Notes: generated from the sequence alone by a model not told the origin. A stretch of DNA of 64,000 nt from Octopus bimaculoides (GCF_001194135.2 NC_068998.1:2393548-2457547), one strand, 5' to 3'. Positions 22,140 through 61,656 are shown, counted from the first letter of the stretch. Numbers and translations: made by a program.

Positions 22140-24921
22140 ATGTATATGTACACCTACACATTTCCTTAGGCCGAGCTTGAACTCAGAACTTTATTTCTAA
22201 TGTTAGGTTCCAACATTAAAACCTTGAATTAGAAAATGTATCTCTACATCCCACAGTTCAGGCAGCAACTAGTCACTTATCCATAAACATAATTCTACCA
22301 CAATCTTTTAATCAATATTTCATCTTAGTTCAATAATGTCAGCCGCATTGTGCCAAAAATCACATGATGGACTGACTCTTCTTTATAATCATTCCTCTGT
22401 AGACAGTCTTTCAGAGTCTTTATTCTGCTGCTTAGTCTTGTAATAGAAACTTCACACCAGAGTGGGATACAATTCCTGTTCTAAAACCATACACATTCTT
22501 GTATTCCACAGTTTGATGTTTCACTTTTTGATCAAAGATTTTTCGATGTTCTCCAATAATTGGTTCCTAGATTCCAAAATCTATCAGAGAATACAGACAT
22601 TGGGAAAATGATGTAGATAGAAGAAAAATTGGGGTTGGTGGGAGGGTGACAGTCAAATCCGTGTCTACAGCGCCACTCATAAGTCATTTTTGGTTTTTCA
22701 GAGATGTGGGTTGAGTTGCAGTTCTATACCTGCCTAGAGAGATGTATTACTAGTTTCACAAATTGCATTGTGGTCATACTGGAGTTCCAATTTCTATTTT
22801 TAGTACAGCCAATTACATTGCCCCCCACCTCTTATTTCATTAACTTTGTAAAACATGAAAGGCATGGTGGCCTCCAGCAGGATTTAAACTGGGAACATAA
22901 ATGGATCATTACACAAATACCACAACTTAAATTGTTCAATGCTTTACTGATTATGCCCTCTGCCAACTATGTACAGCTGGATTTATTTATATATATATAT
23001 ATATATATCCATCCCCCCAATTTCTCATACAGTCTTGTGTAGCTTCGTGTGTTCTCACCCAAGATAAGTACCAACATTCCCATGTGGCAGGCTTGATAGT
23101 TGTGAAGGGATAATCTGCATGAAACCATTGGTAGTTTTGTTAGCTCACAAATAAAGAACATTTATTCACCAATGAGGTTTTGAACACTCATTCTCACTGT
23201 TCGATACTAGTGTGTGTGTATGTATGTATATACACACATACTGATGATACCAGTAAATGCATATGATGGCAGCAAGAGATGTGTGTGTCTATGCATCAAC
23301 CTGAATATTGTGTCTAAACATCATTTCCACACCAAACATAATGCTATGCTTCGTTGCATTTCTTCCAGTTTATTTTCTGAGTTCAAATTCTGCCGAGGTC
23401 AGTTTTGCTTTTCATCCTTTTGAGGGGGGACAATGAAATAAGTACCAGTTAAGTGCTGAGGGAAGGGGTCAATGTCATTGACTAGGTTCCCCAACAAAAA
23501 AATTTTAGGGCCTTGTGCCTATAATAGAAAGGATTATTATTGTTAGTATTGCTGTCAAAAATGATATCCCTGCAATTCCCTGTCCAATCTCTTCCCCACT
23601 GCCAATGTTCTGGGAACACTAATCGACCAATCGTTAAAGGGGTCATAGGTCAGTTAAATCCCCCACAGCCCCACCACCACTCTTCACCCCTGACCCAGAA
23701 GGACATCATATTGACAGAAGCAAAACACACAACAACAACGTTAATTATCTGCTGTAATTTATTTTTATTTATTATTTTATAGTACTTTTTTGTTTTGTGT
23801 GTGTGTGAAATGGTGTTGGAGTCTGCGGCGGGGGGGGGGGGGAGTTGTGGCCTTCATGCTGCTGAAAGTGAAGGAGGAGGATAAGATCGGTGGTGGAGGG
23901 GTGGGCTCCAGGGCATGCACCGCTCTAAAATCAAAATCAAAAACAAAGACAAAAATTTGTAAATATATATATTTGTGTGGTTGTATATAGATTTAATTTA
24001 AATGAACTACTACTACTATTATTACTACTACTACTACTACTACTACTACTATTACTACCTGCTGAACTGACAATGATGATGATGATGATGATGATGAATT
24101 CGTTTAGAGCGATCTAAAGACTATGATGTAATAACAATGACAATATCATCTCTGGTGAATTTAATGATTTCTGTAATAAAAGAAAAAAAAACATCATTTT
24201 CCATCTGATTCTACAAGAAATGGTTTTCTGTTTTTCTTTTCTTTTTCTGCTGTTTTTGTTTTTGTGTGTATGTTTGTCATATTACTGTTTTATTTGCTGT
24301 TTATTTTTTTTTATATAAATGTGATTTTTATTATATTTTTTGCATTATTATGAAATATTCTCCTGATCATCATCAACATTTTAGCACGTGAAATGCTGAT
24401 GATGATGATGGTGTCAATGAGATGGTGGTCGTGATTTTTAACACCATTTTGTCTTTTATCTCTTCCAATTACTGCAGAGGTAGAGTGAGGTGTTATAGTT
24501 AAGTTTGTGCCCCAGAGGACTGTTGGTGATTTCATCTTAATCAATAAAGAAGGGGGTCAGTGCCTAAGATGGCCCATTGTGCAGTTTAGCACACAACGCA
24601 CATAAAAGAGAACTCTCCGGAGTATTTCGTTTGTCCTCTGTTTTTTTAAGAGAGTAGATTGTGATTTGAAAATTTTACTGCTATTTCTAGCAGATCGAAC
24701 AACCATGTAGAGGCTCTCCATCGTTGCCTTGTCTCCATGTCTGTTGGTTCAAGTCATGGCCATGTTGTAAGTTAGTGACATAGACTATAAATAGCGCACG
24801 GCAGTTGTGCTTCCTATGCTTAGTGTTGGCCATCCTTGGATGTCGAGTTAATGGTTTTGTATGTAAATTGTTCACCAGTTATCTCCCTTACAATGTGTTA
24901 CGTAGAACCGCAACGATTTAA

Positions 24922-27987: not shown

Positions 27988-30900
27988 GTAAGATACTCAT
28001 TATTGTTACCATTATTATTATTATATCTGACACGGTTTCGTTACTAATTAAACAATTTATGTTGTTGTCTAAAGCTGTGTATAGTAATGTGGAAATGTTT
28101 TATTCTAAGTGACGATATTTTCGCTCTGCGACAAACTGTTTCATTTATAACAGCAGTCTACTTTTCTGCTAAATAGTCATAAAAATATACATGTACTCAT
28201 ATTTTGAGTTCTATTTTTACCTGTTTGCATCAACATAACCTATATATGTACTTTATTATTACTGAAGTTGCAAAAACATAAAATACTGCTACTCGGAGGT
28301 TCTCGTTCGTCGGACGGTTTAGACTGAGAATACACACACGCACAACTATTTATATGGTAGAGATGGACTATATGTAATCTGAACCTTTCCCCCCCCTTAT
28401 TTATTAATTTTTTGGCACCGTCATGCTATTAGCTGTCAGAAGTGAAAGTGCTCACTGCTAGTGAAGTATCTGTCTGTTACTGGCCTGTCGATTCTTTGGC
28501 TACTGACAGCTAATACCATGACTGGCCGGAGCGAGCTATATGTCTGTCTGTCTCTCTCTCTCTCTATCTATCTATCTATTACTCGAAAGTTCGCGCGTCC
28601 GCGCTAGCTAGTCGTGAGTAGAAAACACAAATTTAATATAAAAACATATTTCCTGAAATTGCAAATTATTTAAAATATAAAAATATAATTTTCANNNNNN
28701 NNNNNNNNNNNNNNNNNNNNNNNNNNNNNNNNNNNNNNNNNNNNNNNNNNNNNNNNNNNNNNNNNNNNNNNNNNNNNNNNNNNNNNNNNNNNNNNNNNNN
28801 NNNNNNNNNNNNNNNNNNNNNNNNNNNNNNNNNNNNNNNNNNNNNNNNNNNNNNNNNNNNNNNNNNNNNNNNNNNNNNNNNNNNNNNNNNNNNNNNNNNN
28901 NNNNNNNNNNNNNNNNNNNNNNNNNNNNNNNNNNNNNNNNNNNNNNNNNNNNNNNNNNNNNNNNNNNNNNNNNNNNNNNNNNNNNNNNNNNNNNNNNNNN
29001 NNNNNNNNNNNNNNNNNNNNNNNNNNNNNNNNNNNNNNNNNNNNNNNNNNNNNNNNNNNNNNNNNNNNNNNNNNNNNNNNNNNNNNNNNNNNNNNNNNNN
29101 NNNNNNNNNNNNNNNNNNNNNNNNNNNNNNNNNNNNNNNNNNNNNNNNNNNNNNNNNNNNGTATACCCAGATTACATATACTCCATCTCCACCATTTATA
29201 TATATATCGTTTGTAGAAAACATAAATCTGGAGAAGCAGACTCTAAGGTGTAGAGCAGTATGTATTCTCTTCTACTCTAGGCACAAGGTCCCAAATTTCT
29301 GGGAGGGGGGGGCAGTCGATTAGATCGACCTCAGTATGCAACTGGTACTTAATTTACCGACCCCGAAAGGATGACAAGCAAAGTCGACCCCGGCGGAATT
29401 TGAACTCAGAACGTAGCGACAGACGAAATACCGCTCAGCATTTCGCCAGGCGTGCTAACAATTCTGCTCAACTCGCCACCTTAGAGAAGTATATATTAGA
29501 AATGCGGAAGGCCGGTTTATGGGACTACTTTAGGTTTCCCGTCCGTTAAAGGGTTTAGTTTTATGGTGTATCGTCAGACCCCAAAACCTGTTGGCTTATG
29601 ACCTCTTCAAAATATTTATAATTAAGATCTAAACTGTTAATATATAAATGCAAAATAGTTGAATAACTGAAAACCTGCTTTTGGGCCACCCTATACATAT
29701 TGTTTATATTTGGGGATGGTCATCTTTTTTTTACCAAATAAACACACGCAGTCCAGTGACCGAAACAGGTAAACGGATTTTTAGAAAATAAAAAAAAAAG
29801 AAAAACCAAAATATATAACCGAGGTAGGTTATAAAAAAACTTTCAAGAGATTTGGCTGTTATTTCTAGCATGTCGAGAGACCTAGGCTTAACTTTACATT
29901 GGGTTAAAAATCATCTAAAACAATTCTGGGGTCAATACATTCAGCTAAAAATTCTAAAAACGAAGAAAAACCCAAAAAATATAACTGTGGGGCTTTTGTC
30001 TGGATCCCGTATGTAAAAATTTGTCTCTTCTCTAAAATTGCATTCGAAAAAAGACTCATATATATTAGTATTCACCCTTAGACATCAGAAAGATCAGAAA
30101 TGCACCAAAAATTTTAATGAAAGAGGATCTTGGAAAAATGGCAGATGATATGTATAGCCTTAGTTCTGTTGGTGTGATGCAGCCACTCTGTGCTAAGTTC
30201 TTGGGAAACCATTTGGTGTTGACAGCTTTGACTATTGTTTCACAACATGTCTCTTATGCGTATGATTTCATTTTGCACCTATGTGGCTTTTGCTCTGGTA
30301 GTCAGGGCTGACTTGTATACAAACAGGTTCCAACCACCTGCATTTCTGCAAAAATTAATATTGATGGAAACGCAGCAGAGAAATGGTGCACACCAGTCCG
30401 TCCCTGAAGAAATTTCTATCAAGGAACGATATCACAGATAGCATTGTAGGGTGCACACTCACCAATATGGAGGCCCTCTTTATAATCAAATTGAAATCAG
30501 CCATTAACAACAGGTAGGAGCTACACAAAGCAGAGTTGTAAAAGCAACACCAATCTGCGCATGTCACTTTCTTTCCCTTTCTCCTTCCTCATTCTTCCTC
30601 CACATATCTGAGCAATAACTTTTCCCAACAACCGCTTTTTCGAAACGTTCTGAATTAGGGATCATAGCCCTGAACTGCAGAAATATAAGGTAAAACTGCA
30701 ACCATTTTGTTTTCTTTATTTTTTGTTCTGGCTTTACACAACTGATGTGTGTGTGTGTGTGTGTGCACAGAATTTTTAACGTTAGCTTTGAAGGAAATTG
30801 AAATAATAGCAAATACTTATATTTTTAACTCCATTTTCTATTGTCTTGTTGGATGGTATTGTCTTTTCTTTCCTCTGTATTCTCTTAAGCTTGCTTCCCA

Positions 30901-33391: not shown

Positions 33392-36300
33392 ATTTATTAG
33401 GTCTTCACTTTAGCCTTATCATTATTATTAGTCTATCATTCTTTCATCCCACATATTATGACCTCTTTAGCAACTTTCTGTTCCTTGTGTGTTCACTTAT
33501 TGCTAGTCTTGTCCTGTCTGTTTTGTTTTACCTTTCTGTTTGTACATGCATTTACGTCTATGTGTGAGTGTATATAGGTTTGTATATCACTGTTTGCACC
33601 TGTCTTTTATTATTTATTCAAAACTTTTTCTTGTTCTGCCTTAGTTGTTGGGTTGCGGGGTGTGCGGAGTGGGACATGGTTATAACTCACTGCAAGTTTT
33701 CTTATGAGACTTGGCCTATTTTCTATCATGTATGTGGCCTCTGTAATCTGAGTGTGGCTTCTGTTTTATGAGACAATAAGATTTTAACATCTGTCATTTA
33801 CTTTTATATCCATGTATTGGATATATGATATCAGGGAAATAAAGTATATACATGACGCATTGCTATTTTTTATTACATGAGACTCAACGCTCTATATCAA
33901 AGGCTCACAGTGAACTGCTATCAATACAGACCTACCAATCGCCCACAGTCAGTCCACTTTTTAGTCACTTGGTGGGTGGTCAGTCGGAATCCTGCCACAA
34001 CATCTACCAAGCACACTTGTTTTAGGTTAGCCTGTTGATATAGCAATGGCAAGCTTTTCTCCTCCTTGAGTCCCCGCCAGTCTTCACTTATCCTCTGTCT
34101 CTACAATGTGCATCCTCTTGTTTCTGCACCACCACCACCACCCCCTCTGTACTCCTTATACTACAGAATGCATTTCTAGTTTTGCAGTTTATCCATGGCC
34201 TTACTCTTTACACTATACAATTCCCATCACTACAGGGGCTTCTTTCAAATGGGTATATTCCAGAGATCAGGGATTTTATGGGAGTTCCTGGTGTTTCTGC
34301 CTGTAAACATTTGACCTTTACTTCTAAAATATTGGCATTGGCCCTCTGGCACCCTCAATTGTATCTTCATGAACTGAGGTATTTCGGATTGCAAGACAGT
34401 GTGTGAGAGAAAATTGTGATGTCACAGGAGACAAATGTGTCCGCATGGATGATGGTGCACTTGATTTTAATGATTCGGAAAAAGAGTCTTGGAGAAGCCA
34501 TTATGAAAGACTGCTGAACGTGGAGAATGAATGGAAGGAGGAGAGCCTGCCAAATGGTGACCCTGTAGACTCTACAGTGTAGAGGGACCAGCTATCCGAA
34601 TAGACAGTATCCTGGTAGATAAAGCAATTAAGGGTATGAAGCCAGGAAAAGCCCCCCAGCCCATCAGGAATCACTGCTGAGATGCTTAAAACATCTGGTG
34701 GTGTGGGTTATGGCCTAATCACCCGCATTCTAAACCAGGTAGCACATAAAAAGCACCCACTACACTCACGGCATGGATGGCGTTAGGAAGGGCATCCAGC
34801 TGTAGAAACACTGCCAGATCAGACTGGAGCCTGGTGCAGCCTCCTGGCTTCCCAGACCCCGGTTGAACCATCCAACCCATGCCAGCATGGAAAACGGACG
34901 TTAAACGCTGATGATGATGATATATATATATATATATATATATTGAGCAGATTGGAGCCTGGGGCAGCCTTCTGGCTTGCCAGCCCTCGGTCAAACTGTC
35001 CAACCCGTGCCAGCATGGAAAGCGGATGTTAAACAACAATGATGATGATGATTGCATGTTAACTGCTCAGGCACTCCATATGTAAATGACGATTAATGTC
35101 TATTGCTGTGTGTGTGTGTGTGTGTGTTTAAGAATGCTGTCTATAGTGTAAGGTGTGCAAAGGGACAGACATAAACAAGAATATCCATCCAGTACAATTG
35201 TTCTCCGCACCATTTGTGGCACTGCATGGAATGGAGAGTGAAAGTGTTTCATATCACTAGTTAACTATAGGCATAGGTGTGGCTGTGTGGTTAGCAAACT
35301 CCCTTTGCAAACACATGGTCTCTGGTTCAGTTCCACTGAGCAGTACTTTGGGAAAATGTCTGCTTCATTGAAGGAATGTGCTCGTGTGTGTGTGTGTGAG
35401 AACATGGGGTTTGTGTGTCTTTGGACTTTTTTCTTTGCTTTTATATTTAAGGTCATATTTTCTTCACTTTGTTGATAGCATTAAAATCTGTTTTCTTTGT
35501 AGGATCAATTCTTGTTTGGACATTATTATTGAAGGAATTCGATTCTTGAAAGATCTCCACATTGAACCTGGGTCTGCCAAGGACCACTCACAACTTGAAA
35601 CATTTGACCAGTTACAGGAGACGTTTACACATTATTTCACAAAAGGCTCTGCTGCCGAAAGAACATTCCAGGATGTGGAAGCTTTCAAGAAAATGGTTTC
35701 TGTGGCACAGTCACAACCTAATGCTCAGGTGAGCAATTCTAACATTGCTTGATTGGAATGGTGGTAGTGGTGGTGTTGCTGTAGTGGCCACATAAGATCA
35801 CTTCCTACTTCGGACAGTTCTGGATATAACAGAGTGGTGGCATAGTGATGACTGTGGTAGTGTTATGGTAGTTGCAATGTTAGGAGATAGTAGAAGTATT
35901 CAGCTGCTAATTTAAGGTAAAACAGGTGTATCTGTTATTAACTCCACTTTTTGCGAAATGATTCTATTTTGGTAAACTATCAAATATTTCTTTAACTCTT
36001 CTTTTTTAAAGCCTCCTTAAGATTCATTTCTTTTTAATTTTCTATTTCCAGAAATATTTAGGTGGAAATGCTTTGTTGATGGCCAACAAAATTGCGTCGA
36101 ATTTTCCTGAGGTCAAGGTATGCTACATTTTCTCTCTTATTCTATCACATGTCACTTCTTTTCTTCCGTTTTCTGGGGTTTTTTTTTTTTTAATATTCCT
36201 GCAAATGTTGACTTGTAATAATTCTAAATGGCGTTAACAACATCCTGCTCATCTTCCTTAGAGGTTCTGCAAAGGCCATGAGCACTACTCCTTCTTCCAA

Positions 36301-39300
36301 ACTCAAAAATTTGTTTTGTATTCTTCTAACCCTTTATCTCTCTCCCCAGGTGCAATATGTTGGTCCCATTGGCCCCATTGTCCGAGAAGCGATGCCTCAA
36401 AACATTGACGTCCCCAAAGAGAGCTTGCTGTCAGAGGATGAGGTTCACCTGATACTGGAATACAAAATAGGTGATGTGTGGGGCAATCACACCAGCATTG
36501 TGGCTAACCGTTTCATTCTCAACAACAACTTAGCCAACCTCAACCAAGCCCTCATGAAATTCTTTTTCAGTTCTTTAGAGATTTATCAGCCAGAGTTGAT
36601 AGTCTTCTCTGGTTTGCACACATTCTCAGCACAAGATCTTGAGGTCAGTCAGAGGAAGGTTAAAGAAATTGCCACACACTTCCAGATGCTCCCTATCTCT
36701 GTTCCTGTACATCTGGAACTGGCTAGCATGACGGAACCAAACTTTGTCATAACGTTGCTCAAAAAGGTCAGTGATATATTCTGTTTTCTACCGCTGATGT
36801 CCTTCGTTGTTCTGAGTTTGGGTCTCAGTTCTGTGAGTCTATGCNNNNNNNNNNNNNNNNNNNNNNNNNNNNTTTTTTTTAAGAATGCAAGGCGGCAGGA
36901 TATTCTTTGAGTCCATTTGTAGTCTGTTAATGAATGTTTTGTAAAACCAAACAATACGAGTCATGTAAAAAGATAAACATTAGATTGTTGTTTATTTCAA
37001 GGAAAGCTATAGTAAAACGGCATTCCAGTTGTGACCACCCCACCTTTATTTCTTTCCCAAGTATAATGTATCTGGGATCACATTATCCTCTGTCATCTAT
37101 TTTGTTACATTAAGACAGTAGGGTGTAGTTTGAGAGAGAGAGAGATTGTTTTGTTGTGGCAAGCGTCATTGACACCCTTGGGGGATTGGAAGAATGGACA
37201 AGCCAAACTCTTATAAAGAGTAGCAGATTCGTTGAGACAAGAGGTGTCGGTAGGAGTTGTTGAGAGGCTGTTTTGGAGACTTGCGAAGTATGCCGTGTGA
37301 ACACATTGATTTTAGCTCTGCTTCATTAAATCATATATCCAACGTTTGTCAAGGATATAAAATATTTCAAGCAGGCTGAACAGCTGTGTAGAAGCTTGTG
37401 TGGACTGTGTGAGGCTGTCTGTGGGGACATGAGCAAGAATTGGGTGAAGTATGATCTATTGAGTCAGGGACTGAGTCTCAAAGAACTTTAATGTTTTTTA
37501 TGGAAGAGAGGTTTCTTTGGAATCTGAATAGTTTCTTGTTATTTTGCAGCTGATTCCACTGGTTTCTTCACTTGGCCTGAATGAAGTGGAACTGGCACAG
37601 TTGTCGTACCTAGGCAAAGGACCTCACACCGAACACGGCCCTTCTCTCACATCAACTGTAAGTAGAGTTCAAAACTGTTGTTTGATTCTGGTTAAGGAAT
37701 TGAATTTTTTTTTTATTATTATTACAGAAAATCTCAAACACAGGATAGCTGTGAAAAAAAAAAGGCTTAGAAGGTTGGGTAAATAGCCTGAGAAGATGGA
37801 GAAAAAATGGCCAAGAAGCTGCTACAGAGAATTGAACCCTGCACATTTCAAATTCAGGCCAAGTGCTCTGTACCATTAAGCTAAGTGACCCCTAACTTAA
37901 GGATACAGACAGCTTGGCTGGGATTTGAAAGGTATAGGGTTCAATTTTCAGTAGTGACTTTCTGGCCACTTCTTTTCTGTTCTCTAAATTTATCACAGCT
38001 AACCTGCGTTCAAAATTTCTTTTACTTCCTGTAAAATGCCAATTTACTTGGTGCTTCTAAGTTGGTTTGTAAAAAATGTTAATTGTCTTTCTTTTTTGAT
38101 CTATAAATATCTAAAAATAGATATTGATCTTGTTATCAAGACAATCATCGTGTAAATATTACCAACGAAAGTAACTATTAATAATTAAATATGCGAAAAT
38201 GCATCAACTATTTCAAATCAGTCACAATTTGCATTTTATTAATCCAAATTAACTACATTTCTTGTCAAGAAAGACGAGAAATGATTCTCACTGTTTTGTT
38301 ACTATAATTCTTCCGTCCAACCCATGGACGGGTTATTTCCCCTGGACCAGAGGATAAATGGGAGCTCGGATCTCTTACATTAAGGTCTCATATTAGCCTA
38401 AGCAGCAAACAAGGATTGATGTGGAGATAGTTTTAAAGGAAAACTAAATTTACATGACATCTAAGATTTAATTAACAAGTATTATAAGAAGTGAATATAG
38501 ACATATATGGTGGGAGTGAGAAGAGAAACAGCTTAGTGGGTAGTATATTGAACGACCAACTTGTAAGTTGGTTGGAGGTATTGTGTTGGATTGCTAGATA
38601 GGACTTGATGTAGTGTTCTAGTTCACTTTGGAGATGGCAAAAGATGGTGTGTGTATGTATGCGCTTGCGTGAGCCTGAGTTTACTAAGAAGACAGAAACT
38701 AGTCAATATAATAATAGTGGAATTATTTGTGATATTATTACTGGTTTTCCATTTAACAAGATTGGTGATAATGATTTTAATGCTATAGAAAACCAGATAC
38801 GAGGACACATTAGGCAATGTTTTAAGGGCCTGGAATTGTAAAAGGAACAAATAACCCTCGTATAATGGCTCTCCTTGGTTTGTCCATTTCACTTTTGTTT
38901 TTTGTTGTTTTTTTTTTGCAGGTGTAGCATGTAAGTGCAGTTCTAATGTGCATGTATTTAAACAGCCAAGTTGTTATTCTGTCATCTCATTGCAGGACAG
39001 TTCTTCAGGTTTTGCTGTCAACCAGCCAGAAATCCATAAAGTCTCCGACATAATCTTGTGGTTATTAAAAACCTTTGGCTACTCCAAAAAGGATTTCCCT
39101 GCATCCCGACTGACTCGCATTCATTTCCACTCCTTGACTTACCACATTGTAGGGGTCGTACCTGAAGCCTGGGAAAACAGCGAGTCAGCAGCGGCTGCTG
39201 GCACTCAGATAGCAGGGCGGCAAGCTTGTAATACCGAGCGGTTGGTGTCTGAGGATGTGAAACTAAAGATTCCGGAAGCATTCCGCCTCCATTCCAATGC

Positions 39301-39478
39301 CAAACCACGCTCTCTTGATGAGAAACGGCCAGTGATCTCATGGGATTTGGAAGGGTATCACTTTGTCTTCAGCCCTGTTCTGGTCTGTCAACATCCCAAG
39401 AGGACTGTCGGTTTAGGTGACGCAATCTCGTCTACGGGACTGATGTACTCAACTTTCAAAACTAAATATCGACTATAA
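27767..39478 (+). CDS. ADPGK: ADP-dependent glucokinase, complete, 6 coding exons, 506 aa, N-terminal hydrophobic signal/anchor
   Basis: Exons 27767-27987, 35503-35728, 36052-36117, 36350-36766, 37550-37657, 38996-39478 (1521 nt, phase-consistent). Motifs: AWD..IKPP..RVSVGINSCLD, KGSAAERTF, GGNALLMA, HLILEY, VHLELASM, SLGLNEVEL, LTRIHFHSL, RTVGLGDAIS. Confidence 0.96.
29270..29481 (-). mobile_element. tRNA-derived SINE (Pol III A/B-box head, conserved core ...catcctttcggggtcggtaaattaagtaccag)
   Basis: Minus strand reads ggtggcgagttgagcagaat...gttctgagttcaaattccgcc; related copies near 23350-23540, 47700-47830, 56030-56240, 61110-61350. Confidence 0.75.
31620..32300 (-). mobile_element. RTE-clade LINE fragment, C-terminal part of the RT ORF, frameshifted
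   Basis: VDSFRYLGD..SGGGC..SVTTRIRIAWAKFRELLPLL...LHGSETW...; then RLHWYG...GRRRPRKTW in a second frame. Confidence 0.9.
32313..32586. repeat. GC-rich minisatellite, ~58-67 bp unit (gccagtgcccctggactggctc.tgtgcgggtgacacatgaaat...), at least 4.4 copies, running into a gap
   Basis: Units start near 32313, 32371, 32438, 32501 and 32563; the array abuts the RTE fragment. Confidence 0.85.
34376..34745 (+). mobile_element. RTE-clade LINE fragment (region preceding RT), frameshifted
   Basis: VFRIARQCVRENCDVTGDKCVRMDDG...WRSHYERLLNVENEW...VDKAIKGMKPGKA-SPSGITAEMLK. Confidence 0.85.
35503..35728 (+). CDS. ADPGK: ADPGK exon 2
   Basis: ctttgtag|G ATC...CAG|gtgagc; INSCLDIIIEG...KGSAAERTFQD. Confidence 0.95.
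36052..36117 (+). CDS. ADPGK: ADPGK exon 3
   Basis: atttccag|AAA...AAG|gtatgc; KYLGGNALLMANKIASNFPEVK. Confidence 0.94.
36350..36766 (+). CDS. ADPGK: ADPGK exon 4
   Basis: ctccccag|GTG...AAG|gtcagt; VQYVGPIGP...EVHLILEY...VPVHLELASM. Confidence 0.95.
37550..37657 (+). CDS. ADPGK: ADPGK exon 5
   Basis: ttttgcag|CTG...ACT|gtaagt; LIPLVSSLGLNEVELAQL. Confidence 0.94.
37817..37892 (-). pseudogene. Degenerate tRNA-like sequence (tRNA pseudogene or SINE head) in ADPGK intron 5
   Basis: Minus strand GGTCACTTAGCTTAATGGTACAGAGCA...GCAGGGTTCAATTCTCTGT has A- and B-box spacing; anticodon and acceptor stems pair poorly. Confidence 0.4.
38996..39478 (+). CDS. ADPGK: ADPGK exon 6 (terminal)
   Basis: cattgcag|GAC...TAA; KVSDIILWLLK...LTRIHFHSL...SPVLVCQHPKRTVGLGDAISSTGL. 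An alternative acceptor at 38965 is possible. Confidence 0.94.
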   Translation, partial: DSSSGFAVNQPEIHKVSDIILWLLKTFGYSKKDFPASRLTRIHFHSLTYHIVGVVPEAWENSESAAAAGTQIAGRQACNTERLVSEDVKLKIPEAFRLHSNAKPRSLDEKRPVISWDLEGYHFVFSPVLVCQHPKRTVGLGDAISSTGLMYSTFKTKYRL

Positions 39479-44640: not shown

Positions 44641-45030
44641 AACCAACTGTTTCAGGACCCTGCTCTGGTCATAGGGACAGTTCTTTATAATGTGGCCCAG
44701 TTCCAGGCACAGGTGACCCAACCCAATCAGCCACTGGCAACATTTTTACATTAAGCAGCTTGGATCTGCTGCCATCCAGACCCCGACGGATAATGTCTTC
44801 TATCCACTCAGGTTCCATCCTAGGTGGCAACCCGCAGACCCAAGCTCTTGTCAACTTCTTCCCACGATACGTGGGAAGAAACAAAATCTCTTTGCCCTCT
44901 AAGGGCTGGCTTGCAAATTTGCGAGCCTCCTTAGGGGTGTCAAATAGCAACCACACCGTTGCATACTTGACCCCACTGGAAATAAATTTTATGGTTACTC
45001 AATCCTGGTGTTTATACTATATGGTCCTTG
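44641..45030 (-). mobile_element. Decayed coding fragment resembling a non-LTR retrotransposon ORF1 (RRM-like)
   Basis: VTIKFISSGVKYATVWLLFDTPKEARKF...ILFLPTYRGKKLTRAWVCGLPPRMEPEW; resemblance to LINE ORF1 proteins is from memory only; truncated by a gap. Confidence 0.4.
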
Positions 45031-45033
45031 AAC

Positions 45034-45228
45034 CCTATCTGAAAGTTTTGGTTTTCTTCCAGAATTTTGTTTCAACGAGGAGGTTCTTCCCTCTTTCTCA
45101 AAGGCTGTCATTACTTTTGAGACAGTACTTCTTGATACACCAAACATTTCAGCTGTTTACGTTACGCTAGTGCCTGCCGTACGAGCACCAACGATTTGAC
45201 CTCTTTGAAAGTCTGGTAGATCTGTCAT
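45034..45228 (-). mobile_element. Tc1-family transposase N-terminus (HTH), one in-frame stop, truncated
   Basis: MTDLPDFQRGQIVGARTAGTSVT*TAEMFGVSRSTVSKVMTAFEKEGRTSSLKQNSGRKPKLSDR (GRKPK motif). Confidence 0.9.
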
Positions 45229-46799
45229 TTTTAATGAATTTTAATTACCTTTTTCTGGTAATATCTGAAAAGAAACAGCAAATTTAGCAAAACATATTAA
45301 GCAATACTAATGATAAATAAATAAAAAAATGCAAAAATAAACACGCTTTTGACGGTTTTATAGATATTTCAGAATTATGATGCGTAGCATCTCTTGTGTG
45401 CACCTTACCTCATGTGTGCAGCATACATCAACGTCTCCTTTCAAGCATCTCTACAATCTCACTAGACCTACCTTTCAGTGTGCCTACATTGACTGTGCCA
45501 ATTCTGGAAACTGAGAAAGGAATGTGGGGTGAGGCTTGGGGAGGAGAGATGTTATTCAGTGCCTGAAAAGAAGAGGGAGGTTGTATTCATTTTTTAGGCA
45601 TGCTTCATCTGTTCTCACTTCCGACCTGTCTATAGAAATCCTTTAACAGCATTGTAATGGTTAAAATTTACTCAGGTTAAGAGGGTAAGACAAGGTAGAC
45701 AAACACTAAAAGTAATTTCACAGCATAGACATGATACTGCGGTAGATCACATGCTAAAGTAGCATCGATTATCGTCATTGATAAATGATTAGAGACAGTT
45801 TTAAATACCCGGTGCAGCCTTCGATTTCCAAAAATGTTTTAAAAAATGACTTGCCTATAATTTTTTTTTTTTTTCTTTCGAACATCAGTGTTGTAATATT
45901 TAGCTATGAAAACAAGTTGCTTGCAGGTAAAGAACTTTGTTGGGTTTAGTTTTGACAGCAAATTATTCCAAACATGTGGACTAATCACATTAGAAACGGT
46001 GCATATTTCTTTAGTTCTCATGCATTTCATGTCTTTGGTAGCTTTTGAATCAGGACATACATTAGATAATGAAACTAGGCTGAAACACTAATGGCATGGG
46101 TGTACTCAGCCATGACTCTACTTGATTTTAGCTCAGCTGATGCTTTTTTTGTTGTGTCAAACATTGACCAACTTTAACAAACTAGGTTGCTTTAGCCGAT
46201 TTTCAACTATGACAAAAGTTTCCTTTCATAGGAAGTAGATTTCAATTTATTTTTCTGGGAATTGTCATTTTGTCCCTATTTGAGTAATGTTCTTTCCCAT
46301 GCTTTTATGCAAAAATAAATGTTCAGGTATAGAACAATGGCACTACTGTGACTCACAGCTCCTTGCATTGAACAAAAACGGTAATGAAATAACAATTCTT
46401 CAGTGCAGTATTGAAGATGACTCGCATGCATCATGGCAGGACTGCTTCGTTTTCTCTTTCATTGTATGATAAGAATCATGCCTGTAGTCTGCTGACATTC
46501 TTTATAGCTTAGCTTGATGTGCTTTTTACATACAAGCTGAAAGGGAGGAAATTTTCTCCCAGACAAAATCTGGCAGCAAATGCCTTTCACATTCTTGTGT
46601 ACAAGAACATGTTAAAAAGCAATGTACACATCATTATTTTAATCCTCGTTGCTTTGTGTGCTCATACTAAATTAATTTCATGTAGACAAGTCTCTGCACA
46701 TGTTAAGAAATGTGGTATTTGCTATTTTCTATACAGGAACATAAATTCCGGCCTGGTTTCATGTAGCAAAGAAGCTCAAAACATACCCAGATAGTCTGC

Positions 46800-47058
46800 T
46801 TTGTAGTCATCTGATGTTATGTGGAACTCAGTTTGATGTGTTCTTTATACACAGTCTACAGGGAGAAATATTTCTCCAAGACAAAATCCATCAGCAAATG
46901 CATTTCCATGTTCCTGTGTACAAGAGCATAACTGTAGACAGCTCCATTTCGTTCTGTTTCCATGGAAACATTCTATTATTGTAGGAGATAATGAACAGAG
47001 GTTTTATAATTCTGTGCATAACCTCTCTCTCTATCCAAACATAAAATGCATTTGAATG
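46800..47058. repeat. Direct repeat, left copy (259 bp)
   Basis: tttgtagtcatctgatgttatgtgg...aatgcatttgaatg, near-identical to 49366-49573. Confidence 0.9.
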
Positions 47059-47879
47059 TAATAATCTTGTTCATAATCCAATGTGACTCGATAGCAAAAG
47101 AAGTAATCCTTCTTCTCCCCTACCACTCACCTCGTTTTTTATAATGGAGTAAAGGAACTGCATGAATGGTATCTCCCCTCGTTCAGTCAATGTCTTCTTC
47201 CATTTTATTATTATTGACTCTTGGTTATACAAGAACAGGTTAAAAAGAAAGGTAAACCATTCAGTTTACTTCTATTTTCATGTAAACGTTTAATGAAATG
47301 CAGTTGGGTATTAAAATGCCATTTGCTTTCGCTCTAAAACCACAAATTACTATCAAAACACACGTGGCGAATGCAACAAACATAACAGAAATAGGCTTTA
47401 CCTTGTATGAACTATAGAAGCAAGGGACGTCTATATTCTAGGATTAATTGATCTCACTTTCTGTATGATAAACTTACTCAAAGCTCTTCAGCCAGATTTA
47501 ACGCAAAGCATCCGTTTCTGAAATATTCATCACATTATTCTGTGTATGTTCTTTCAATTGAATGCCCCCGTGACATTCAGATGCAAACATAACGTGAGCC
47601 AGTATATATAAAATTAATTATGTATCATTACCATTATTAATAATACTAATGATGGGAATAAAGTGGCAAGCAAATATATACCTTTAAAGGTATAAAATTG
47701 CTAGCCACTTTATTATTCTTTTCTACTGTAGGCACAAGGCCCAGAATTTTGGGGGAGGGGGCCAGTCGATTAAATTGACCCAGTACACAACTGGTACTTA
47801 ATTTCTCAACCCTGAAAGGATGAAAGTTATGGAAACGTGCACATGCAAAAGAATAACAAGACATTATGACAGTTAAATT

Positions 47880-49340
47880 GTTTTATTTAAGCCTTGCTGC
47901 ATGCAAAACTGGAATAGTACAGAGTTTAGAACATCAAATCTATGAATTGATGCAAATTTGCCAATTTATTAAAGTAGGGGGTTATGAAATTTAAAAGGTT
48001 TGGGGTATGTTGGCAGTTTTGTATAATCCAGAAATGGTTTCTTATGTCGTTGGTGAGGTGTAGTCATAAATCAGGAGTTACTGGGTACCTGGGTAGTGGA
48101 CTCCATTCGGCATCGTTGCTGGTGCTTGATAAATTGTTCCATGTTGCATTCATCAAAGTTGTTACCATGCACGATACAGGCTTGTGTTAGTTGTGATTAG
48201 TTGTATCTGCACGGGGTGACGATTCTAGTCTCTTGATGTGTTCAGTTCTGGCGTTGGCAGGTGATAGTGTCTGCTTCAGTCTGTAACTTCGTTTGGGTTT
48301 ATTGGTAAGTTATGTTTGGAAATATTCATTGCTTACAAATTTCTCTATATATGGTTTCCAAACCGTGAGCCACATGAGTGGTCTGAGCTCCACTTTTCCC
48401 CATTTTCAGTGAGTCTTTTACATGTATAACTACGTTCCATGGTTCTACATTGTTGGTTGAGAGAGAAGGCGTTCTCTTTAGTATGCATTCATTTTGGTGT
48501 TTAATGCTAATGTCTGTTGGAGTGCCTTCCAATATACATTTTGCCTCCTCAATGCTGTTCGTGTTGAACCACACCTCCTCTGTATATATTAGTCTTATCA
48601 ATGCAGATGCCAAATGGGAAATTATTTGATGCTTGGCATCGCATTCGTCCGCAGTTCATTAAGCCATTTCTGATGGAGCGTAGTATGTAAGATTTGCCGT
48701 TGTTTGATGGTCGCGTTATGTGGAGTCTGTTTATTTTTGTGTTTATTTTATGGCATACTTCAAATGACTGTTGATTCAAATCTTCATGTGAAAAATTGTG
48801 GAACTCTATCCAGTCATTGTGAATATCTAGAGATGTTTGCACATCGTGGTATGTATTGTTCATGTTGGCGAAGAGCTCAGTTTTTTGTTGGATTTCTTTC
48901 CGCACTGGTACTTTTGTTTCAACTGCTGCCTGAATGATATTGAATACGTTAGAGGTGTTCAGATGTATGCCGTTCCATTGGTTTTGGGATTTCTCTTTTG
49001 TTGTCGTCTGGCAAAATATTATGTCCCTCACGTCTGTTGAGTTGCACTTTACCATCATTTTTTTGATGAAGGCATATTGGGCACCTCCGCTAGGTGCTAT
49101 TTCCTCCCAAGACAGGCCTGGCACCGTGGTTACAAAGGATGCAAACATTTTATAAATATTCCCACTCGAAAGCATGGTTGTTATAGCTGTGTAGTGTCAC
49201 TATGTATACATATATAAAATACATTTGCCTGTCGTATTTTTCATAATCCAGTGTGACTTGGTTGCATTGACAAGGTCTTGGGTGGCCATGTAAAGTAGTC
49301 TTTGAATGACTCAGTCTTGTACCCGGCCACCCACCCACTT
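47880..49340 (-). pseudogene. Endogenous parvovirus/densovirus-like element: NS1 (SF3 helicase) gene fossil
   Basis: ORFs 49175-48549 and 48613-48326 join across a frameshift near 48590: KINTKINRLHIT-RPSNNGKS (Walker A), NFPFGICIDKT/LIYTEE (Walker B), IEEAKCILEG, ISIKHQ (B'), KRTP..TNN (motif C). AATAAA on the minus strand at 47965-47970 and 47882-47887. Confidence 0.88.
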
Positions 49341-49365
49341 CATTGAGAGTACCAAAACACTTTGG

Positions 49366-49573
49366 TTTGTAGTCATCTGATGTTATGTGGAACTCAGTTT
49401 GATGTGTTCTTTATACACAGTCTACAGGGAGAAATATTTCTCCAAGACAAAATCCATCAGCAAATGCATTTCCATGTTTCCGTGTACAAGNNNNNNNNNN
49501 AGATAATGAACAGAGGTTTTATAATTCTGTGCATAACCTCTCTCTCTATCCAAACATAAAATGCATTTGAATG
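49366..49573. repeat. Direct repeat, right copy (interrupted by a 10-N gap)
   Basis: Matches 46800-46924 and 46986-47058 with ~2 nt difference. Confidence 0.88.
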
Positions 49574-57041: not shown

Positions 57042-60000
57042 GTAAGGAAACTGATTATGTTGGGGGGAGAGGGAGAGACACACACACACGCATAAAAGAG
57101 AACACACAAACACATATGAAACAGACCTTCACACACACACACACACACTGAGTTTGTCAAATTCTTTTCATGTACCTCAATTTAAGTACCTAATTTAACT
57201 GAATCTTATATATATATAATGAACATTACCAATGTACAAGCAGTGTCCTTTACTTCCAATCTCCCTTAAAAAAAACATATCCTCAATAGGAAAATATTAC
57301 CTCGCTTGGTGACAGGTGAGCGTTAGCAACAGGAAAGGCATCCAGCTGTAGGTAATCAGTATCAATAAATTCTGTCTGACCCATGCAAGCATGGAGAATA
57401 GGACATTAAAACAATTACAAAAATGTGTACACTAAGTAATTTCATCAATTGTATGTTTTTTGGTTTCTTTTCCTTTATTTGTCTCCTTTGAATTTTTTCT
57501 TTCCTTTTCAAGACTCTTCGTGGTATAAAGCCTTCTCATTCAACACCAATTCCATGTCTAACCCTGCTGATGTATTCTTTGGCAAATATAATCAAAGTCG
57601 CCCTAATTCTGAATTCTACCGAAGTTCTCTCCTTGATGTCTGGGACTCTCTTAATATTAACGAGGTAAACCTTTTAAGTCCTCTTTCAAAGGGATTTTTT
57701 TTTTATTTCCCCTCATCCTTCATCTGTTGACTTTTTAGATTTTCAACCCTGTGGTTTTGGGTTCATTCCTTATGTGTGGCACCTTGGGCATCTTCTCCTA
57801 TAACCCTGTTAGCCGCCAAATGCCTTATGATGACTTTGATAGACATAAACTATGTGAAAGCCTATCGTATGTTTGTGTTTGCTTTTCCCATCACCACTCG
57901 ACAGCTGGTGTTGGTTTGTTTTCATCCTTGTCATTTAGTGGTTCGGCAAAAGAGAATGGTATTGTATGCTATTTCTATCAAGTTGAGTGACCCCAAGGAG
58001 GGACACTATAGCCTGTGTGTTTCTTGCAGTGGTTAATATACAATGGCTCAAGGGAAACATTAATGGTGCCACTAATATGGGGCACCTGAGGACCTGTGAA
58101 GGACCATGGGGTACTGACCCTTCCTTGTGAACCAGGGAGTAAAAAAAATAAAACAAAAATAAAACAAAAATAAGAGAGAAACACACAAACAAGGATAAGA
58201 AAAGAGAGTGGGGAGTGAAGAGATAGAGGTACAGTAAAGAAAGAAAGAAAGCAAGAAGGAAATCTATTTTGAATACTCTCCGCCACTGCCACCACGGGTC
58301 TCACCATAACTTTATCATCTCAATTTCTCGCTTTCTCCTCCAAGGTGAAAATAGTTCTAAGAAAAGCTGATAAAGATGTCCTCACCTTGAAGTTTGCAGC
58401 CATCAACACCAACATTGGCAACTGGTTTTCTGGTTCCAACCTAAAATCTACTCCTTGGTCTGATCTACCACCAGACAATACAACATACAAGATGGATATT
58501 GTCTATAAGTGAGTTACAACTGGTTTTCAATCATAGCTTTATGCACACACACACACACACACACACACACGGGTATGGCTCCCCAACCACATACAAGGGG
58601 GTGCTGAAAAGTTCCTGGCTTTGGATAAAAGAAAATACAGGTGGATCAGTTGATTGATTTCATCACTCATTCAGACAACATGGCCTGCTTATATATATAT
58701 ATATATATAATCACCATGTCTCTTTCATTCACTCTGTGAGTTACTTGGTGACTTCAGCAGTGCTGACAGCATGATGAAATGCACCTCGTGCACTCTGTTA
58801 AATGGTTGACGAATTGAGCAGAGGATTCTTTAGTATTGCTGAAGGTAGGGCAACCTCTCCAGTGCTGGTGTCTCAAGAAACTGCCCCCCCAGTTTTGCTC
58901 TGTAATGTGATTGGTGTCAAAACTTTGTAAAGATGATCAGATGCGGCATGGACCTGCAGTTCACCTAAGAGGGCAACAAATGTCTTGGATTATAAACAAC
59001 TGCCCAACCCATACCAATATAGAAACTTGGTGGGAGGAGGGCAGACGATACGACTGGATGGTTTATGTATTGATTTGCTAAGACATGGGATGAGTGTCCA
59101 AGACAACTGTAGGCAAAACACTATATTCGACACCTAAAGTGTTAACAATGATATTCTCCAGCTAATTTGATGATAATGCCATTGGTAATCTGGGGATGAT
59201 ATCCTCGATAATCTGTTATTCATTCCTGCTGCTTCAATCCCATTGCAAAATTCCTCAAAACCATTGCTGATGTTTTGCCCCTCCCCAAGAGAGATCTATG
59301 AAGTCAATAGTGCCATTGCAATTCCATCACGGTTTTGCTACCATTCCACTACAATCCCATTACTGTCCCTGAGTGACACACTTTTAAGTCTTCCTTTTAA
59401 ACCCCAATCTTCTCTCCACCAACCACCCCCTCACTCAAAATGTTCCTTATTTTCATATTGTAGCATAACAAGTGATGTTAATTTACATAACACTAACCAA
59501 GTTGACCATGGTAACAGCACTAACAACATTGACTACAGTAACCAAGGTAACACCACTAGCCAGGGTGACAACAATTATCAAGGCAACTACAGTACCCTGT
59601 GTAACAATACCGAAGTTGACAATAATAGAAATGAACGTAGTTTCCGTTCTTTCAAACAGAGGAAGAGGTGCAATTTGCCAAAACGGTGTGAAGGACGTAA
59701 ATGCTGGAATACATATGATGAGAGTAAAGTCGGGGAGAACGAGGGTAAAGATGAAGCTAAGAAGGTGGACGACGATGATGATGATAAGGACAAAGAGAAA
59801 TGCAAGGGTAACGGGAAGGGTAAGGGCGATTGTAAGGATGAAGAGAAGGACAAAGAGAAATGCAAGGGCGATTGTAAGGATGAAGAGAAGGACAAAGAGA
59901 AATGCAAGGGTAACGGGAAGGGTAAGGGCGATTGTAAGGATGAAGAGAAATGCAAGGGGAAGGGTAAGGGCGATTGTAAGGATGAAGAGAAGGACAAAGA

Positions 60001-61656
60001 GAAATGCAAGGGTAACGGGAAGGGTAAGGGCGATTNNNNNNNNNNNNNNNNNNNNNNNNNNNNNNNNNNNNNNNNNNNNNNNNNNNNNNNNNNNNNNNNN
60101 NNNNNNNNNNNNNNTAAGGACAAAGAGAAATGCAAGGGTAACGGGAAGGGTAAGGGCGATTGTAAGGATGAAGAGAAGGACAAAGAGAAATGCAAGGGGA
60201 AGGGTAAGGGCGATTGTAAGGATGAAGAGAAGGACAAAGAGAAATGCAAGGGTAAGGGCGATTGTAAGGATGAAGATAAGGGCAGTGATGCTGGTAAAGA
60301 TAAGTGCAAAAACCATGGAAAGGGCCAGGATCGGTGCAATGTCGGTGATGGAAGCCTCAACAGTAACCATGGCAATAACAGTAAGCAAGAAAACAACAGT
60401 GACCACAGTAACAACGGTAACCATAGCAACAGCAGCAACGACCTCAATTCTGAAGAGAAACACCGGAGTTCAGAGAAAAACAACCCAAGGTAATGATCAT
60501 TGTTTTTGTTGTTATATTTTAGCCCTAGGTCAATAGATCTATGTGATCAATATATTAAGAAAATCACTGACAGCACGAAACTGGCTCAAATTCTAAATTT
60601 GACCCCAACCATCAAATCTCCTTCATTAATATTGTTCATTAAATTGCTGTTTCGTTTAGACTTGTTGTCTTTTACCGTGGCCATGCTGGAGCAGCACTGC
60701 CTTGAAGGAATCGACCCCAGGATTTTCTTTTCTTTAAAGCCTGGTTCTTATTTTATTGCATCTTTTTACAGGGACATAAACATACCAACACTGGTTGTGA
60801 AGCAGTGGTGGGGGACAAACACAGGCACAAACACACATATACACTCATAGGTGTGTGTGTATATACACACACACACACACACACACATATGATGGGCTTC
60901 TTTCAGTTTTTGTTTAACAAATCCATTCACACGGTGCTGTGCAATGGGACTGAACTGAGAAACATGTGGTTGGGAACCAAACTTCTTACCACCCAGCCAC
61001 ACTTGTACCTAGGACATTCAAACACGCAACAAATGATTTTTAGAATTGTCTCACCTATTTGCCTCATCCTCAGTAATAAACCAGTTCTGGCAATAAATTA
61101 AGGACCAGTCAAATACTGGAGTCAATGTAATCAGCTTTGCCCCTCCCCACAAATTCTGGGCCTTGTGCACATTGGACACAGTGCTTCATCCATCTTTACG
61201 TTCTGAGTTCAAATTCCACTGAGGTCAACTATGCCTTTCATTCTTTCAGGATCAATGAAATAAGTATCAGTCATGTACTGGGGTCAACGTAATTGACTAG
61301 CTCCCTCACCCAAAATTTCAGGCCTTGTGCCAACAGTAAAAGGGATTATCAATATTGTGAAGATTATTATTATTTCTTTTTGCCAGGTGTGCTTTTTGTA
61401 TTTTTGTGGGTGATTCCCGTATTTGGTTAATGGTTTCAAACACCAAGCCAAGCAACTGGACCACACTTTCACAAGACAACCGTCACTCAATCTGGTATTT
61501 AGAAGAAGGCAAAAAAGCTGATGGCAATCCTGAAGGTAAGAACAAAGCTTTAAGCACCTTACAACTTTTATTCCAGACTAAAATGGCAAATAACCCCTTC
61601 AAAGTGTGTGTGTATATATTCATGTGTTTGTATGAGAATGTATCAGTGTATTTAAA

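What the first reader, a model, noticed from the sequence alone, without database searches (positions are those of the whole stretch)
47880..49340. Endogenous parvovirus/densovirus NS1 fossil in an apparent cephalopod genome
Seen: two minus-strand ORFs (208 aa, 95 aa) that join into a parvoviral-type SF3 helicase: RPSNNGKS (Walker A, Gly>Arg by one substitution, 48690-48713), FPFGIC.DK/LIYTEE (Walker B), IKHQ (B'), TP..TNN (C). Restoring 2 nt (ACTA>ACTCTA) near 48590 fixes the first frameshift. A third frame gives KWGKVELRPLMWLTVWKPYI, and two AATAAA signals follow. No capsid gene was found. Known: this motif order is that of Parvoviridae NS1/Rep. Inference: germline integration of NS-only sequence, possibly from an mRNA, recording a mollusc-infecting parvovirus lineage. 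Long stop-free stretches suggest it is not extremely old.
Basis: partly seen in the sequence, partly recalled or inferred. Interest (0 to 1): 0.88.

Follow-up and report, generated by a model that had tools for sequence, protein, structure and literature searches.

The report
Broken parvovirus NS1 fossil in mollusc DNA
A roughly 1-kb dead fragment of a parvovirus replication (NS1 helicase) gene sits in the DNA of a mollusc; it is a real but ordinary viral fossil, and its relatives elsewhere have an odd capsid-before-replicase gene order.

Summary
On the minus strand, 48232-49175 carries a parvoviral NS1-derived sequence read in three frames. A full-length NS1 profile built from its relatives matches it at E = 7.8e-73, 7.2e-23 and 4.7e-9, covering profile positions 135-414 of 630. 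The Walker A, B, B' and C motifs are in the parvoviral order. Intact relatives hit Pfam Parvo_NS1 at about 1e-15. Among solved structures the family profile hits only AAV2 Rep40/68 and a parvoviral NS1, with no E1, large T antigen or D5.

The copy is dead: the HUH nuclease domain is absent, and there are two frameshifts, one in-frame stop and one missense at an invariant P-loop glycine. The window holds no capsid homology. The fossil lies in a gap-free stretch together with host repeats, so contamination is unlikely.

An mRNA origin lacks a poly(A) tract, and AATAAA occurs at background rate. The host is shown to be molluscan only, not cephalopod. Subfamily placement is unresolved, because the nearest named relatives are unclassified 'Parvoviridae sp.'.

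Parvovirus-related sequences in molluscs, including Octopus bimaculoides, were published in 2016, so this is a new member of a known kind. Side observation: genome-length relatives all show VP1 upstream of NS1 on one strand.

The parts
48232..49175 (-). NS1-derived pseudogene, given as one part. It is 5'-truncated and keeps the linker/oligomerisation region, the SF3 helicase and the C-terminal tail. It is read across three frames. Breaks: 2 frameshifts, 1 in-frame stop, 1 missense at an invariant P-loop glycine, plus small in-frame deletions. The HUH nuclease domain is absent.
   Evidence: ORFs. tblastn of 23 relatives gives a single locus using 3 frames.
48319..49085 (-). The stretch matched significantly by a full-length NS1 profile, at profile positions 135-414 of 630. 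It contains Walker A, B, B' and C.
   Evidence: E = 7.8e-73, 7.2e-23, 4.7e-9.
48137..48231 (-). A short stretch just after the NS1 end that is weakly conserved with the post-NS1 sequence of a relative. It is probably the last recognisable virus-derived DNA on the 3' side.
   Evidence: tblastx of the window's downstream segment against L008's, E = 1.3e-4. No similarity to any relative lies further downstream.
47711..47826 (.). A dispersed host repeat inside the same gap-free stretch as the fossil. Other copies are at 29263-29374, 61235-61341, 61095-61168 and 23410-23539.
   Evidence: Self-blastn of the window, 70-84% identity.
46784..47058 (+). Copy B of a local repeat of about 320 nt. An older tandem copy A lies just upstream, with the matching core at 46483-46610. 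Copy B flanks the 2.29-kb segment (47059-49349) that holds the fossil.
49350..49573 (+). Copy C of the same local repeat, 94% and 100% identical to copy B in its two parts. It is interrupted by the 10-N scaffold gap at 49491-49500.

Best explanation
The feature is an endogenous parvoviral element. A fragment from the replicase end of a parvovirus genome was joined into the germline DNA of a mollusc and has since decayed as a pseudogene. The fragment carries about 60% of NS1: the linker, the SF3 helicase and the C-terminal tail.

The sequence identity, the truncation, the breaks and the embedding among host repeats are shown directly. Several steps are inferred:
- Insertion was by non-homologous joining of viral DNA at a chromosome break.
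- The insertion fell within or next to a small local tandem repeat.
- The copy makes no working protein today.

The copy lacks the nuclease domain, has a damaged P-loop and cannot be read in one frame. The only activity it could plausibly still have is as RNA, for example as a small-RNA source, and that is untested.
For: 1. Homology. There are 23 relatives at 47-85% identity, most carrying Pfam PF01057. Intact relatives score Parvo_NS1 at E = 2e-15 and 1.1e-15.
2. Profile match. A full-length NS1 profile matches the window at E = 7.8e-73, 7.2e-23 and 4.7e-9 in three frames, covering positions 135-414 only.
3. Parvoviral rather than another SF3 lineage. PDB hits of P0004 and of the family profile are AAV2 Rep40/Rep68 (2.2e-8 and 2.9e-11) and a parvoviral NS1. 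Nothing else appears at E <= 10 except a 109-aa protein at 0.89. The ten best full-length library hits all have Parvo_NS1 as their top family.
4. The relatives are true parvovirus genomes. VP1 carries the PLA2 domain (PF08398, E = 3e-7 to 2.6e-14), and NS1 carries HUH-type N-termini.
5. Decay. The copy has 2 frame switches, 1 in-frame stop and an invariant Gly replaced.
6. Host context. There is no N between 44641 and 49490. A dispersed host repeat and a local repeat flank the fossil. Intron-bearing ADPGK exons lie 9 kb away.
7. It is a single locus, and no VP or nuclease homology occurs anywhere in the window.
Against: - No orthologous or near-identical copy was found. The best nucleotide identity to any fetched locus is about 72%, so germline fixation and age are not shown.
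- The exact virus-host junctions cannot be placed. 174 nt upstream and about 1.1 kb downstream, both inside the repeat-flanked segment, are of unknown origin.
- The assembly is gappy, with 15 N runs, and no reads could be inspected.
- The window's two ORFs are weak against Pfam on their own.
Confidence: 0.85

Rival explanations
1. The copy is a processed, retroposed copy of a viral NS mRNA, inserted by host LINE machinery.
For: The copy is 5'-truncated and runs to the 3' end of NS1. In this lineage NS1 is the 3'-most gene, and that shape fits 5'-truncated retroposition. AATAAA hexamers follow on the same strand.
Against: No poly(A) or A-rich tract occurs anywhere in the 1.1 kb downstream. No short target-site duplication was seen. 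AATAAA is at background density. The only flanking duplication is 275 nt long, lies 2.3 kb apart, and belongs to a local tandem repeat.
Confidence: 0.1
2. The feature is a contaminant or assembly chimera: exogenous viral DNA in the sample, wrongly joined to host sequence.
For: The scaffold is a gappy short-read-style assembly, with 15 N runs and a gap 140 nt beyond the upstream repeat boundary. Intact genome-length relatives exist in other samples.
Against: The copy is truncated and broken, unlike a replicating virus. It sits in one gap-free stretch, 44641-49490, with a dispersed host repeat and copies of a local repeat on both sides.
Confidence: 0.03
3. The copy is a co-opted or still functional host gene fragment, for example a helicase-derived protein or a regulatory or defence RNA locus.
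For: A 208-aa stop-free stretch is long for this AT-rich window; only 1 of 100 shuffles reached it. Small-RNA-producing viral fossils are known in other invertebrates (general knowledge, not tested here).
Against: The copy has two frameshifts, a stop, a damaged P-loop and no nuclease domain. No conserved orthologue was found.
Confidence: 0.04
4. The helicase comes from a non-parvoviral element such as a Polinton/adintovirus, a D5-like primase-helicase, a papilloma/polyoma-like virus or a CRESS Rep.
For: Relatives give secondary hits to PPV_E1_C that fall mostly just below its cut-off.
Against: Parvo_NS1 is always the top family, by 10 or more orders of magnitude in the full-length hits. Solved-structure hits are only AAV Rep and a parvoviral NS1. 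Relatives sit beside PLA2-bearing parvoviral VP1 on contigs of about 4-4.5 kb.
Confidence: 0.02

Closest known systems
Endogenous parvoviral elements (EPVs), including the mollusc parvovirus-related sequences of François et al. 2016 (PMC5013282) with an Octopus bimaculoides genomic sequence and protein KOF81493
   Same: It is the same kind of object: an NS1-derived, partly disrupted fragment in an invertebrate genome. That paper also found that mollusc sequences looked closer to vertebrate parvoviruses and fell outside the known genera. This agrees with AAV Rep being the best solved-structure hit here.
   Different: The published octopus sequence is only about 24-30% identical to this family, so it belongs to a different lineage. 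The family here has at least 23 members in public read assemblies, both intact and degraded.
AAV2 Rep40/Rep68 (Dependoparvovirus) SF3 helicase, PDB 1S9H, 1U0J and 7JSE
   Same: The Walker A, B, B' and C motifs occur in the same order and spacing. The alignment covers about 110-140 residues, with E = 2.2e-8 for a single sequence and 2.9e-11 for the profile.
   Different: Similarity is low outside the motifs. The window copy is non-functional and lacks the origin-binding nuclease domain.
Unclassified 'Parvoviridae sp.' MAGs from bird faeces (QTE03882.1, QTE03754.1, QTE03847.1, QTZ83199.1), Pot worm parvo-like virus 2 (WPR17604.1) and Mactra antiquata KAL4217968.1
   Same: These are the nearest named NS1 relatives of the family profile, at E of about 1e-25 to 1e-33, and they have the same domain layout.
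   Different: They are full-length proteins of 561-728 aa. None is assigned to a genus or subfamily, so they do not place the fossil in Densovirinae, Hamavirinae or any other subfamily.

Membership tests
Parvoviridae NS1/Rep (Pfam PF01057, SF3 helicase) | Significant match to the Parvo_NS1 profile, stronger than to other SF3 helicase families | tested here: met
   The window's 95-aa ORF scores 20.0 bits, equal to the cut-off. Relatives at 51-61% identity score 38-58 bits, and PPV_E1_C stays below its cut-off for them. For the full-length library hits Parvo_NS1 is always the top family, although PPV_E1_C also passes its cut-off there.
Parvoviridae NS1/Rep (Pfam PF01057, SF3 helicase) | Walker A, Walker B, B' and C motifs in that order | tested here: met
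   All four are recognisable and collinear with AAV2 Rep40 through P0004. Walker A carries one missense at a glycine that is invariant in the ten relatives.
Parvoviridae NS1/Rep (Pfam PF01057, SF3 helicase) | N-terminal HUH/Tyr rolling-hairpin nuclease domain | tested here: not met
   Profile positions 1-134 have no match anywhere in the window. The domain is present in relatives, as an HUH-type 'HFH' motif in L002 and L012. The window therefore holds a truncated derivative, not a complete NS1.
Parvoviridae NS1/Rep (Pfam PF01057, SF3 helicase) | Nearest solved structures are parvoviral replication proteins | tested here: met
   Only AAV2 Rep40/68 and a parvoviral NS1 are hit. No E1, large T antigen, D5 or CRESS Rep appears at E <= 10.
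Parvoviridae genome (for the lineage the fossil derives from) | Companion VP gene with jelly-roll capsid, a Gly-rich tract and often a PLA2 domain, on a genome of about 4-6 kb | tested here: met
   Relatives' contigs of 3.97-4.47 kb carry VP1 with PF08398 (E = 3.1e-7 to 2.6e-14). L012's VP is weakly IHHNV_capsid-like. This is not met in the window itself, which has no VP.
Parvoviridae genome (for the lineage the fossil derives from) | Terminal hairpins or inverted terminal repeats | tested here: inconclusive
   None was seen in the window segment or in the relatives' contigs. Short-read contigs usually lose them.
Endogenous viral element | Virus-derived DNA physically continuous with host DNA | tested here: met
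   The stretch 44641-49490 is gap-free and holds the fossil, a dispersed host repeat and local repeat copies on both sides.
Endogenous viral element | Vertical inheritance, meaning an orthologous copy in related species or fixation in the population | not testable with these tools
   None of the viral-relative loci (L001-L014, L018) shares flanks with the window. No eukaryote genome collection can be searched by DNA here.
Processed (retroposed) mRNA copy | 3' poly(A) tract and short target-site duplications | tested here: not met
   There is no A-tract downstream of NS1. The only flanking duplication is a 275-nt local repeat.
Densovirinae, Hamavirinae or another named subfamily | Helicase-domain phylogenetic placement within the subfamily | not tested
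   No classified reference NS1 could be obtained from the tools. The nearest named relatives are unclassified.
Cephalopod host | Host genes closest to cephalopod orthologues | tested here: inconclusive
   The ADPGK exon's best hits, at 93% and 78% identity, are unnamed. The nearest named ones are Dreissena polymorpha at 67% and Littorina saxatilis at 56%. The host is molluscan, and its class is not shown.

The most novel reading that the evidence does not exclude
The fossil may mark an undescribed, mollusc-associated clade of Parvoviridae-like viruses whose genomes carry VP1 (with PLA2) upstream of NS1 on the same strand. That is the reverse of every monosense parvovirus arrangement I know of. 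The clade has repeatedly entered host germlines. Intact genome-length copies and decayed copies co-occur in the same sequencing samples.
Probability: 0.35. Interest if true: 0.6.

Novelty: new member of a known kind. Interest (0 to 1): 0.35.

Why it matters
On its own the locus is one more viral fossil. It adds a data point for past parvovirus infection of molluscs and, if an orthologue can be found, a minimum age for that virus lineage. The wider value lies in the family it belongs to: a diverse, largely unnamed NS1/VP1 lineage that is visible only in raw-read assemblies. Its consistent VP-then-NS gene order would, if confirmed at read level, extend the known range of parvovirus genome architectures. 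It also shows that a bivalve 'hypothetical protein' (KAL4217968.1) is probably a viral fossil annotated as a host gene.

Tried and rejected
- AlphaFold2 model of the intact relative P0004 with a 10-row alignment. The mean pLDDT was 39.6, which is unusable, so no fold search was run.
- Pfam on the window ORFs alone. The result was borderline for the 95-aa ORF and empty for the 208-aa ORF.
- Exact-sequence look-up of the 208-aa ORF in public assemblies. It is not on record.
- Search for an orthologous locus. The relatives' contigs match the window only inside the NS1 core at about 68-72% nucleotide identity, with short stretches up to 83% and no shared flanks.
- Terminal hairpins. Only a 58-nt AT-rich palindrome lies next to a host dispersed repeat, and nothing comparable occurs in the relatives.
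- Circular or tandem explanation for the relatives' gene order. No end overlaps or direct repeats were found in the contigs.
- Rfam and tRNA scans of the window. Nothing was found.
- Identifying hosts from run accessions in the literature. There were no hits.
- Literature on a reversed VP/NS order or on the named relatives. Nothing was found.
- LTR reading of the 275-nt flanking repeats. This was rejected because a third, older copy lies in tandem with copy B and the internal segment has no retroelement genes.

Full report
**What is there**

The window is a gappy eukaryotic scaffold. It has 15 N runs totalling 3356 N, a G+C content of about 36% and many microsatellites.

Aligned with relatives, they fall on Walker A, Walker B, B' and C. 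Through the intact relative P0004, these are the same columns as in AAV2 Rep40. The third-frame string corresponds to a conserved C-terminal block of the relatives.

**Is it more than chance?**

Yes, by homology.

- The 208-aa ORF has 23 relatives in the 5.8-billion-protein collection, at E = 1e-52 to 9e-10 and 47-85% identity. All come from Logan read assemblies, and most carry a precomputed PF01057 hit.
- tblastn of all 23 relatives on the whole window finds one locus only. It lies on the minus strand, within about 48232-49088, and uses three reading frames.
- I built a profile from three full-length NS1 proteins of relatives (L012, L013, L014) plus eight family members. I searched it against every stop-to-stop fragment of the six-frame translation. 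It matches three fragments at E = 7.8e-73, 7.2e-23 and 4.7e-9, covering profile positions 135-414 of 630 and spanning 48319-49085. Nothing else in the window reaches E < 0.8.
- ORF length alone would not have been convincing, since 1 of 100 shuffles gave an ORF of at least 208 aa.
- The window ORFs alone are weak against Pfam. The 95-aa ORF scores 20.0 bits, exactly the cut-off, and the 208-aa ORF has no hit.

**Is it parvoviral?**

That criterion is not met.

- Intact relatives score Parvo_NS1 at 2e-15 (P0004) and 1.1e-15 (P0010). Papillomavirus E1 stays below its cut-off.
- Against all PDB chains, P0004 hits only AAV2 Rep40/Rep68 (2.2e-8) and a parvoviral NS1. The family profile does the same (2.9e-11), and even at E <= 10 no E1, large T antigen, D5 or CRESS Rep appears.
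- An exhaustive HMMER search of 1.84 billion representatives gives 1223 relatives at E <= 1e-3. The best full-length ones are 515-681 aa, sit on contigs of about 3-4.4 kb, and all have Parvo_NS1 as their top family.
- The few with names are unclassified:
  - 'Parvoviridae sp.' MAGs from bird faeces;
  - Pot worm parvo-like virus 2;
  - a 'hypothetical protein' on a 27-Mb contig of the bivalve Mactra antiquata.
- Close relatives sit next to a VP1 gene with the parvoviral PLA2 domain (PF08398, E = 3e-7 to 2.6e-14). Their NS1 N-termini carry an HUH-type 'HFH' motif.

The lineage is therefore parvoviral. Subfamily placement could not be tested, because no classified reference NS1 was obtainable from the tools.

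**State of the copy**

Relative to intact NS1 proteins of 517-530 aa (L013, L014), the window retains roughly residues 200-513, at 51-61% identity to family members. The nuclease domain has no counterpart anywhere in the window. The C-terminal tail is present to within a few residues of its end.

| Type of break | Count |
| --- | --- |
| Frameshifts | 2 |
| In-frame stops | 1 |
| Missense at a P-loop glycine invariant in the ten relatives | 1 |
| Small in-frame deletions | A few |

There is no capsid homology in the window. I tested this with the family's own VP1 proteins and with a VP1 profile.

**Surroundings and junctions**

- Just downstream of the NS1 end, about 95 nt (48137-48231) are weakly similar to the post-NS1 sequence of a relative (tblastx E = 1.3e-4). 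Beyond that, nothing resembles any relative.
- The fossil lies in a 2.29-kb segment, 47059-49349. This segment is bounded by two copies of a local repeat: 46784-47058 and 49350-49573, which are 94% and 100% identical in their two parts.
- A third, older copy of that repeat (about 75% identical) lies in tandem just upstream.
- The same segment holds a dispersed host repeat at 47711-47826, with four other copies in the window.
- There is no N between 44641 and 49490. The fossil is therefore contiguous with host repeats on both sides in the assembly, which argues against contamination.
- The 10-N gap at 49491-49500 falls inside the upstream repeat copy.
- I read the arrangement as an insertion within or beside a small tandem repeat. 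This is inference, and the origin of the non-homologous parts of the segment is unknown.

**mRNA origin**

In this lineage NS1 is the 3'-most gene. A 5'-truncated copy ending at the 3' end of NS1 has the shape a retroposed transcript would have. However, there is no A-rich tract in the 1.1 kb downstream and no short target-site duplication. AATAAA is at background density, with 141 in the window, about one per 700-900 nt per strand. I give this sub-hypothesis about 0.1.

**Host**

Two long + strand ORFs, at 36278-36910 and 38948-39478, look like exons of an ADP-dependent glucokinase gene; the second was confirmed (PF04587). Its best hits, at 93% and 78% identity, are unnamed. The nearest named ones are the bivalve Dreissena polymorpha (67%) and the gastropod Littorina saxatilis (56%). 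The host is molluscan. 'Cephalopod' is consistent with the data but was not tested.

**Age**

No orthologue was found. The closest fetched locus is about 72% identical at nucleotide level and shares no flanks. As a rough inference only, three ORF breaks in about 285 codons suggest a few per cent of neutral divergence since inactivation. That estimate assumes about 4-5% of random substitutions make stops and that indels are about a tenth as frequent as substitutions, both of which are general knowledge. 'Not extremely old' is therefore plausible but undated.

**Comparison with what is known**

Endogenous parvoviral elements are a well-known class. François et al. 2016 (PMC5013282) reported parvovirus-related sequences in six molluscs. 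Their list includes an Octopus bimaculoides genomic sequence and the protein KOF81493. They noted that mollusc sequences resembled vertebrate parvoviruses more than densoviruses and fell outside the known genera.

The machine-read KOF81493 alignment row from their supplement is only about 24-30% identical to this family, and it barely touches the window fossil (E = 0.086). The present family is therefore another lineage. Current taxonomy has six subfamilies (PMC13426907). None of them could be assigned here.

**Side observation**

Every genome-length contig of a relative shows VP1 upstream of NS1 on the same strand, with a spacer of about 18-160 nt.

| Locus | Contig length | Note |
| --- | --- | --- |
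| L013 | 4470 nt | Intact copy |
| L014 | 4409 nt | Intact copy |
| L012 | 3974 nt | From an NCBI assembly |
| L018 | 4150 nt | |
| L002, L004-L008 | 3.7-4.3 kb | Degraded copies |

- This holds across NS1 proteins as little as 24-28% identical to each other.
- The contigs show no end overlap, direct repeats or terminal inverted repeats that would suggest circular permutation.
- I know of no parvovirus with this order, and a literature search found none. I cannot exclude that it has been described.
- Intact and degraded copies co-occur in the same samples: ERR14857108 holds both L013 and L008, and ERR3431203 holds L014, L003 and L011.

**Verdict**

The window feature is an ordinary, dead viral fossil, a new member of a known kind. 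Its family deserves a descriptive follow-up.

Noticed in passing
L013:228-3645, L014:251-3867, L012:398-3853, L018:26-3811; also L002 and L004-L008: In all genome-length contigs of relatives, the VP1 gene (with a PLA2 domain where full-length) lies upstream of NS1 on the same strand, with a spacer of about 18-160 nt. I know only NS-then-VP or ambisense arrangements in Parvoviridae. No end overlaps or terminal repeats explain it.
   Followed up: partly
window 46784-47058 and 49350-49573, with an older copy matching at 46483-46610: A local repeat of about 320 nt occurs three times. Two near-identical copies (94-100%) bracket the 2.29-kb segment holding the fossil, and a 75%-identical copy lies in tandem upstream. 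Its role in the insertion is unexplained, and it could also reflect a local duplication.
   Followed up: partly
window 47711-47826 (copies at 29263-29374, 61235-61341, 61095-61168, 23410-23539) and 47657-47714: A dispersed repeat of about 115 nt (70-84% identity between copies) is probably a host SINE- or MITE-like element. A 58-nt AT-rich palindrome lies directly beside the copy near the fossil. There is no Rfam or tRNA match.
   Followed up: partly
window 36278-36910 and 38948-39478 (+): These look like exons of an ADP-dependent glucokinase gene; the second was confirmed as PF04587. The nearest named homologues are molluscan (Dreissena 67%, Littorina 56%). An unnamed 93% hit comes from runs SRR11869391 and SRR11869394.
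   Followed up: partly
L008 and L013 (both ERR14857108); L003, L011 and L014 (all ERR3431203): Intact VP1+NS1 copies and frameshifted or truncated copies of the same family occur in the same sequencing samples. This suggests either many germline copies of different ages or fossils alongside virus present in the sample.
   Followed up: partly
P0077 (KAL4217968.1, Mactra antiquata, on a 27-Mb contig): A 728-aa bivalve 'hypothetical protein' is an NS1 homologue of the family profile (E = 2.4e-25). It is probably an endogenous parvoviral element annotated as a host gene.
   Followed up: no
window 59243-60493 (+): A 416-aa ORF is built of Lys/Asp/Glu/Cys-rich repeats (KDKEKCKGNGKGKGDCKDEE-like units) and is interrupted by an N gap. 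It may be a repetitive host exon or a minisatellite.
   Followed up: no
L014:4294-4400: Two A-runs of 13 nt lie about 430-530 nt after the NS1 stop of this intact relative. They might be a transcript tail if the run is RNA-seq, or simply AT-rich flank.
   Followed up: no
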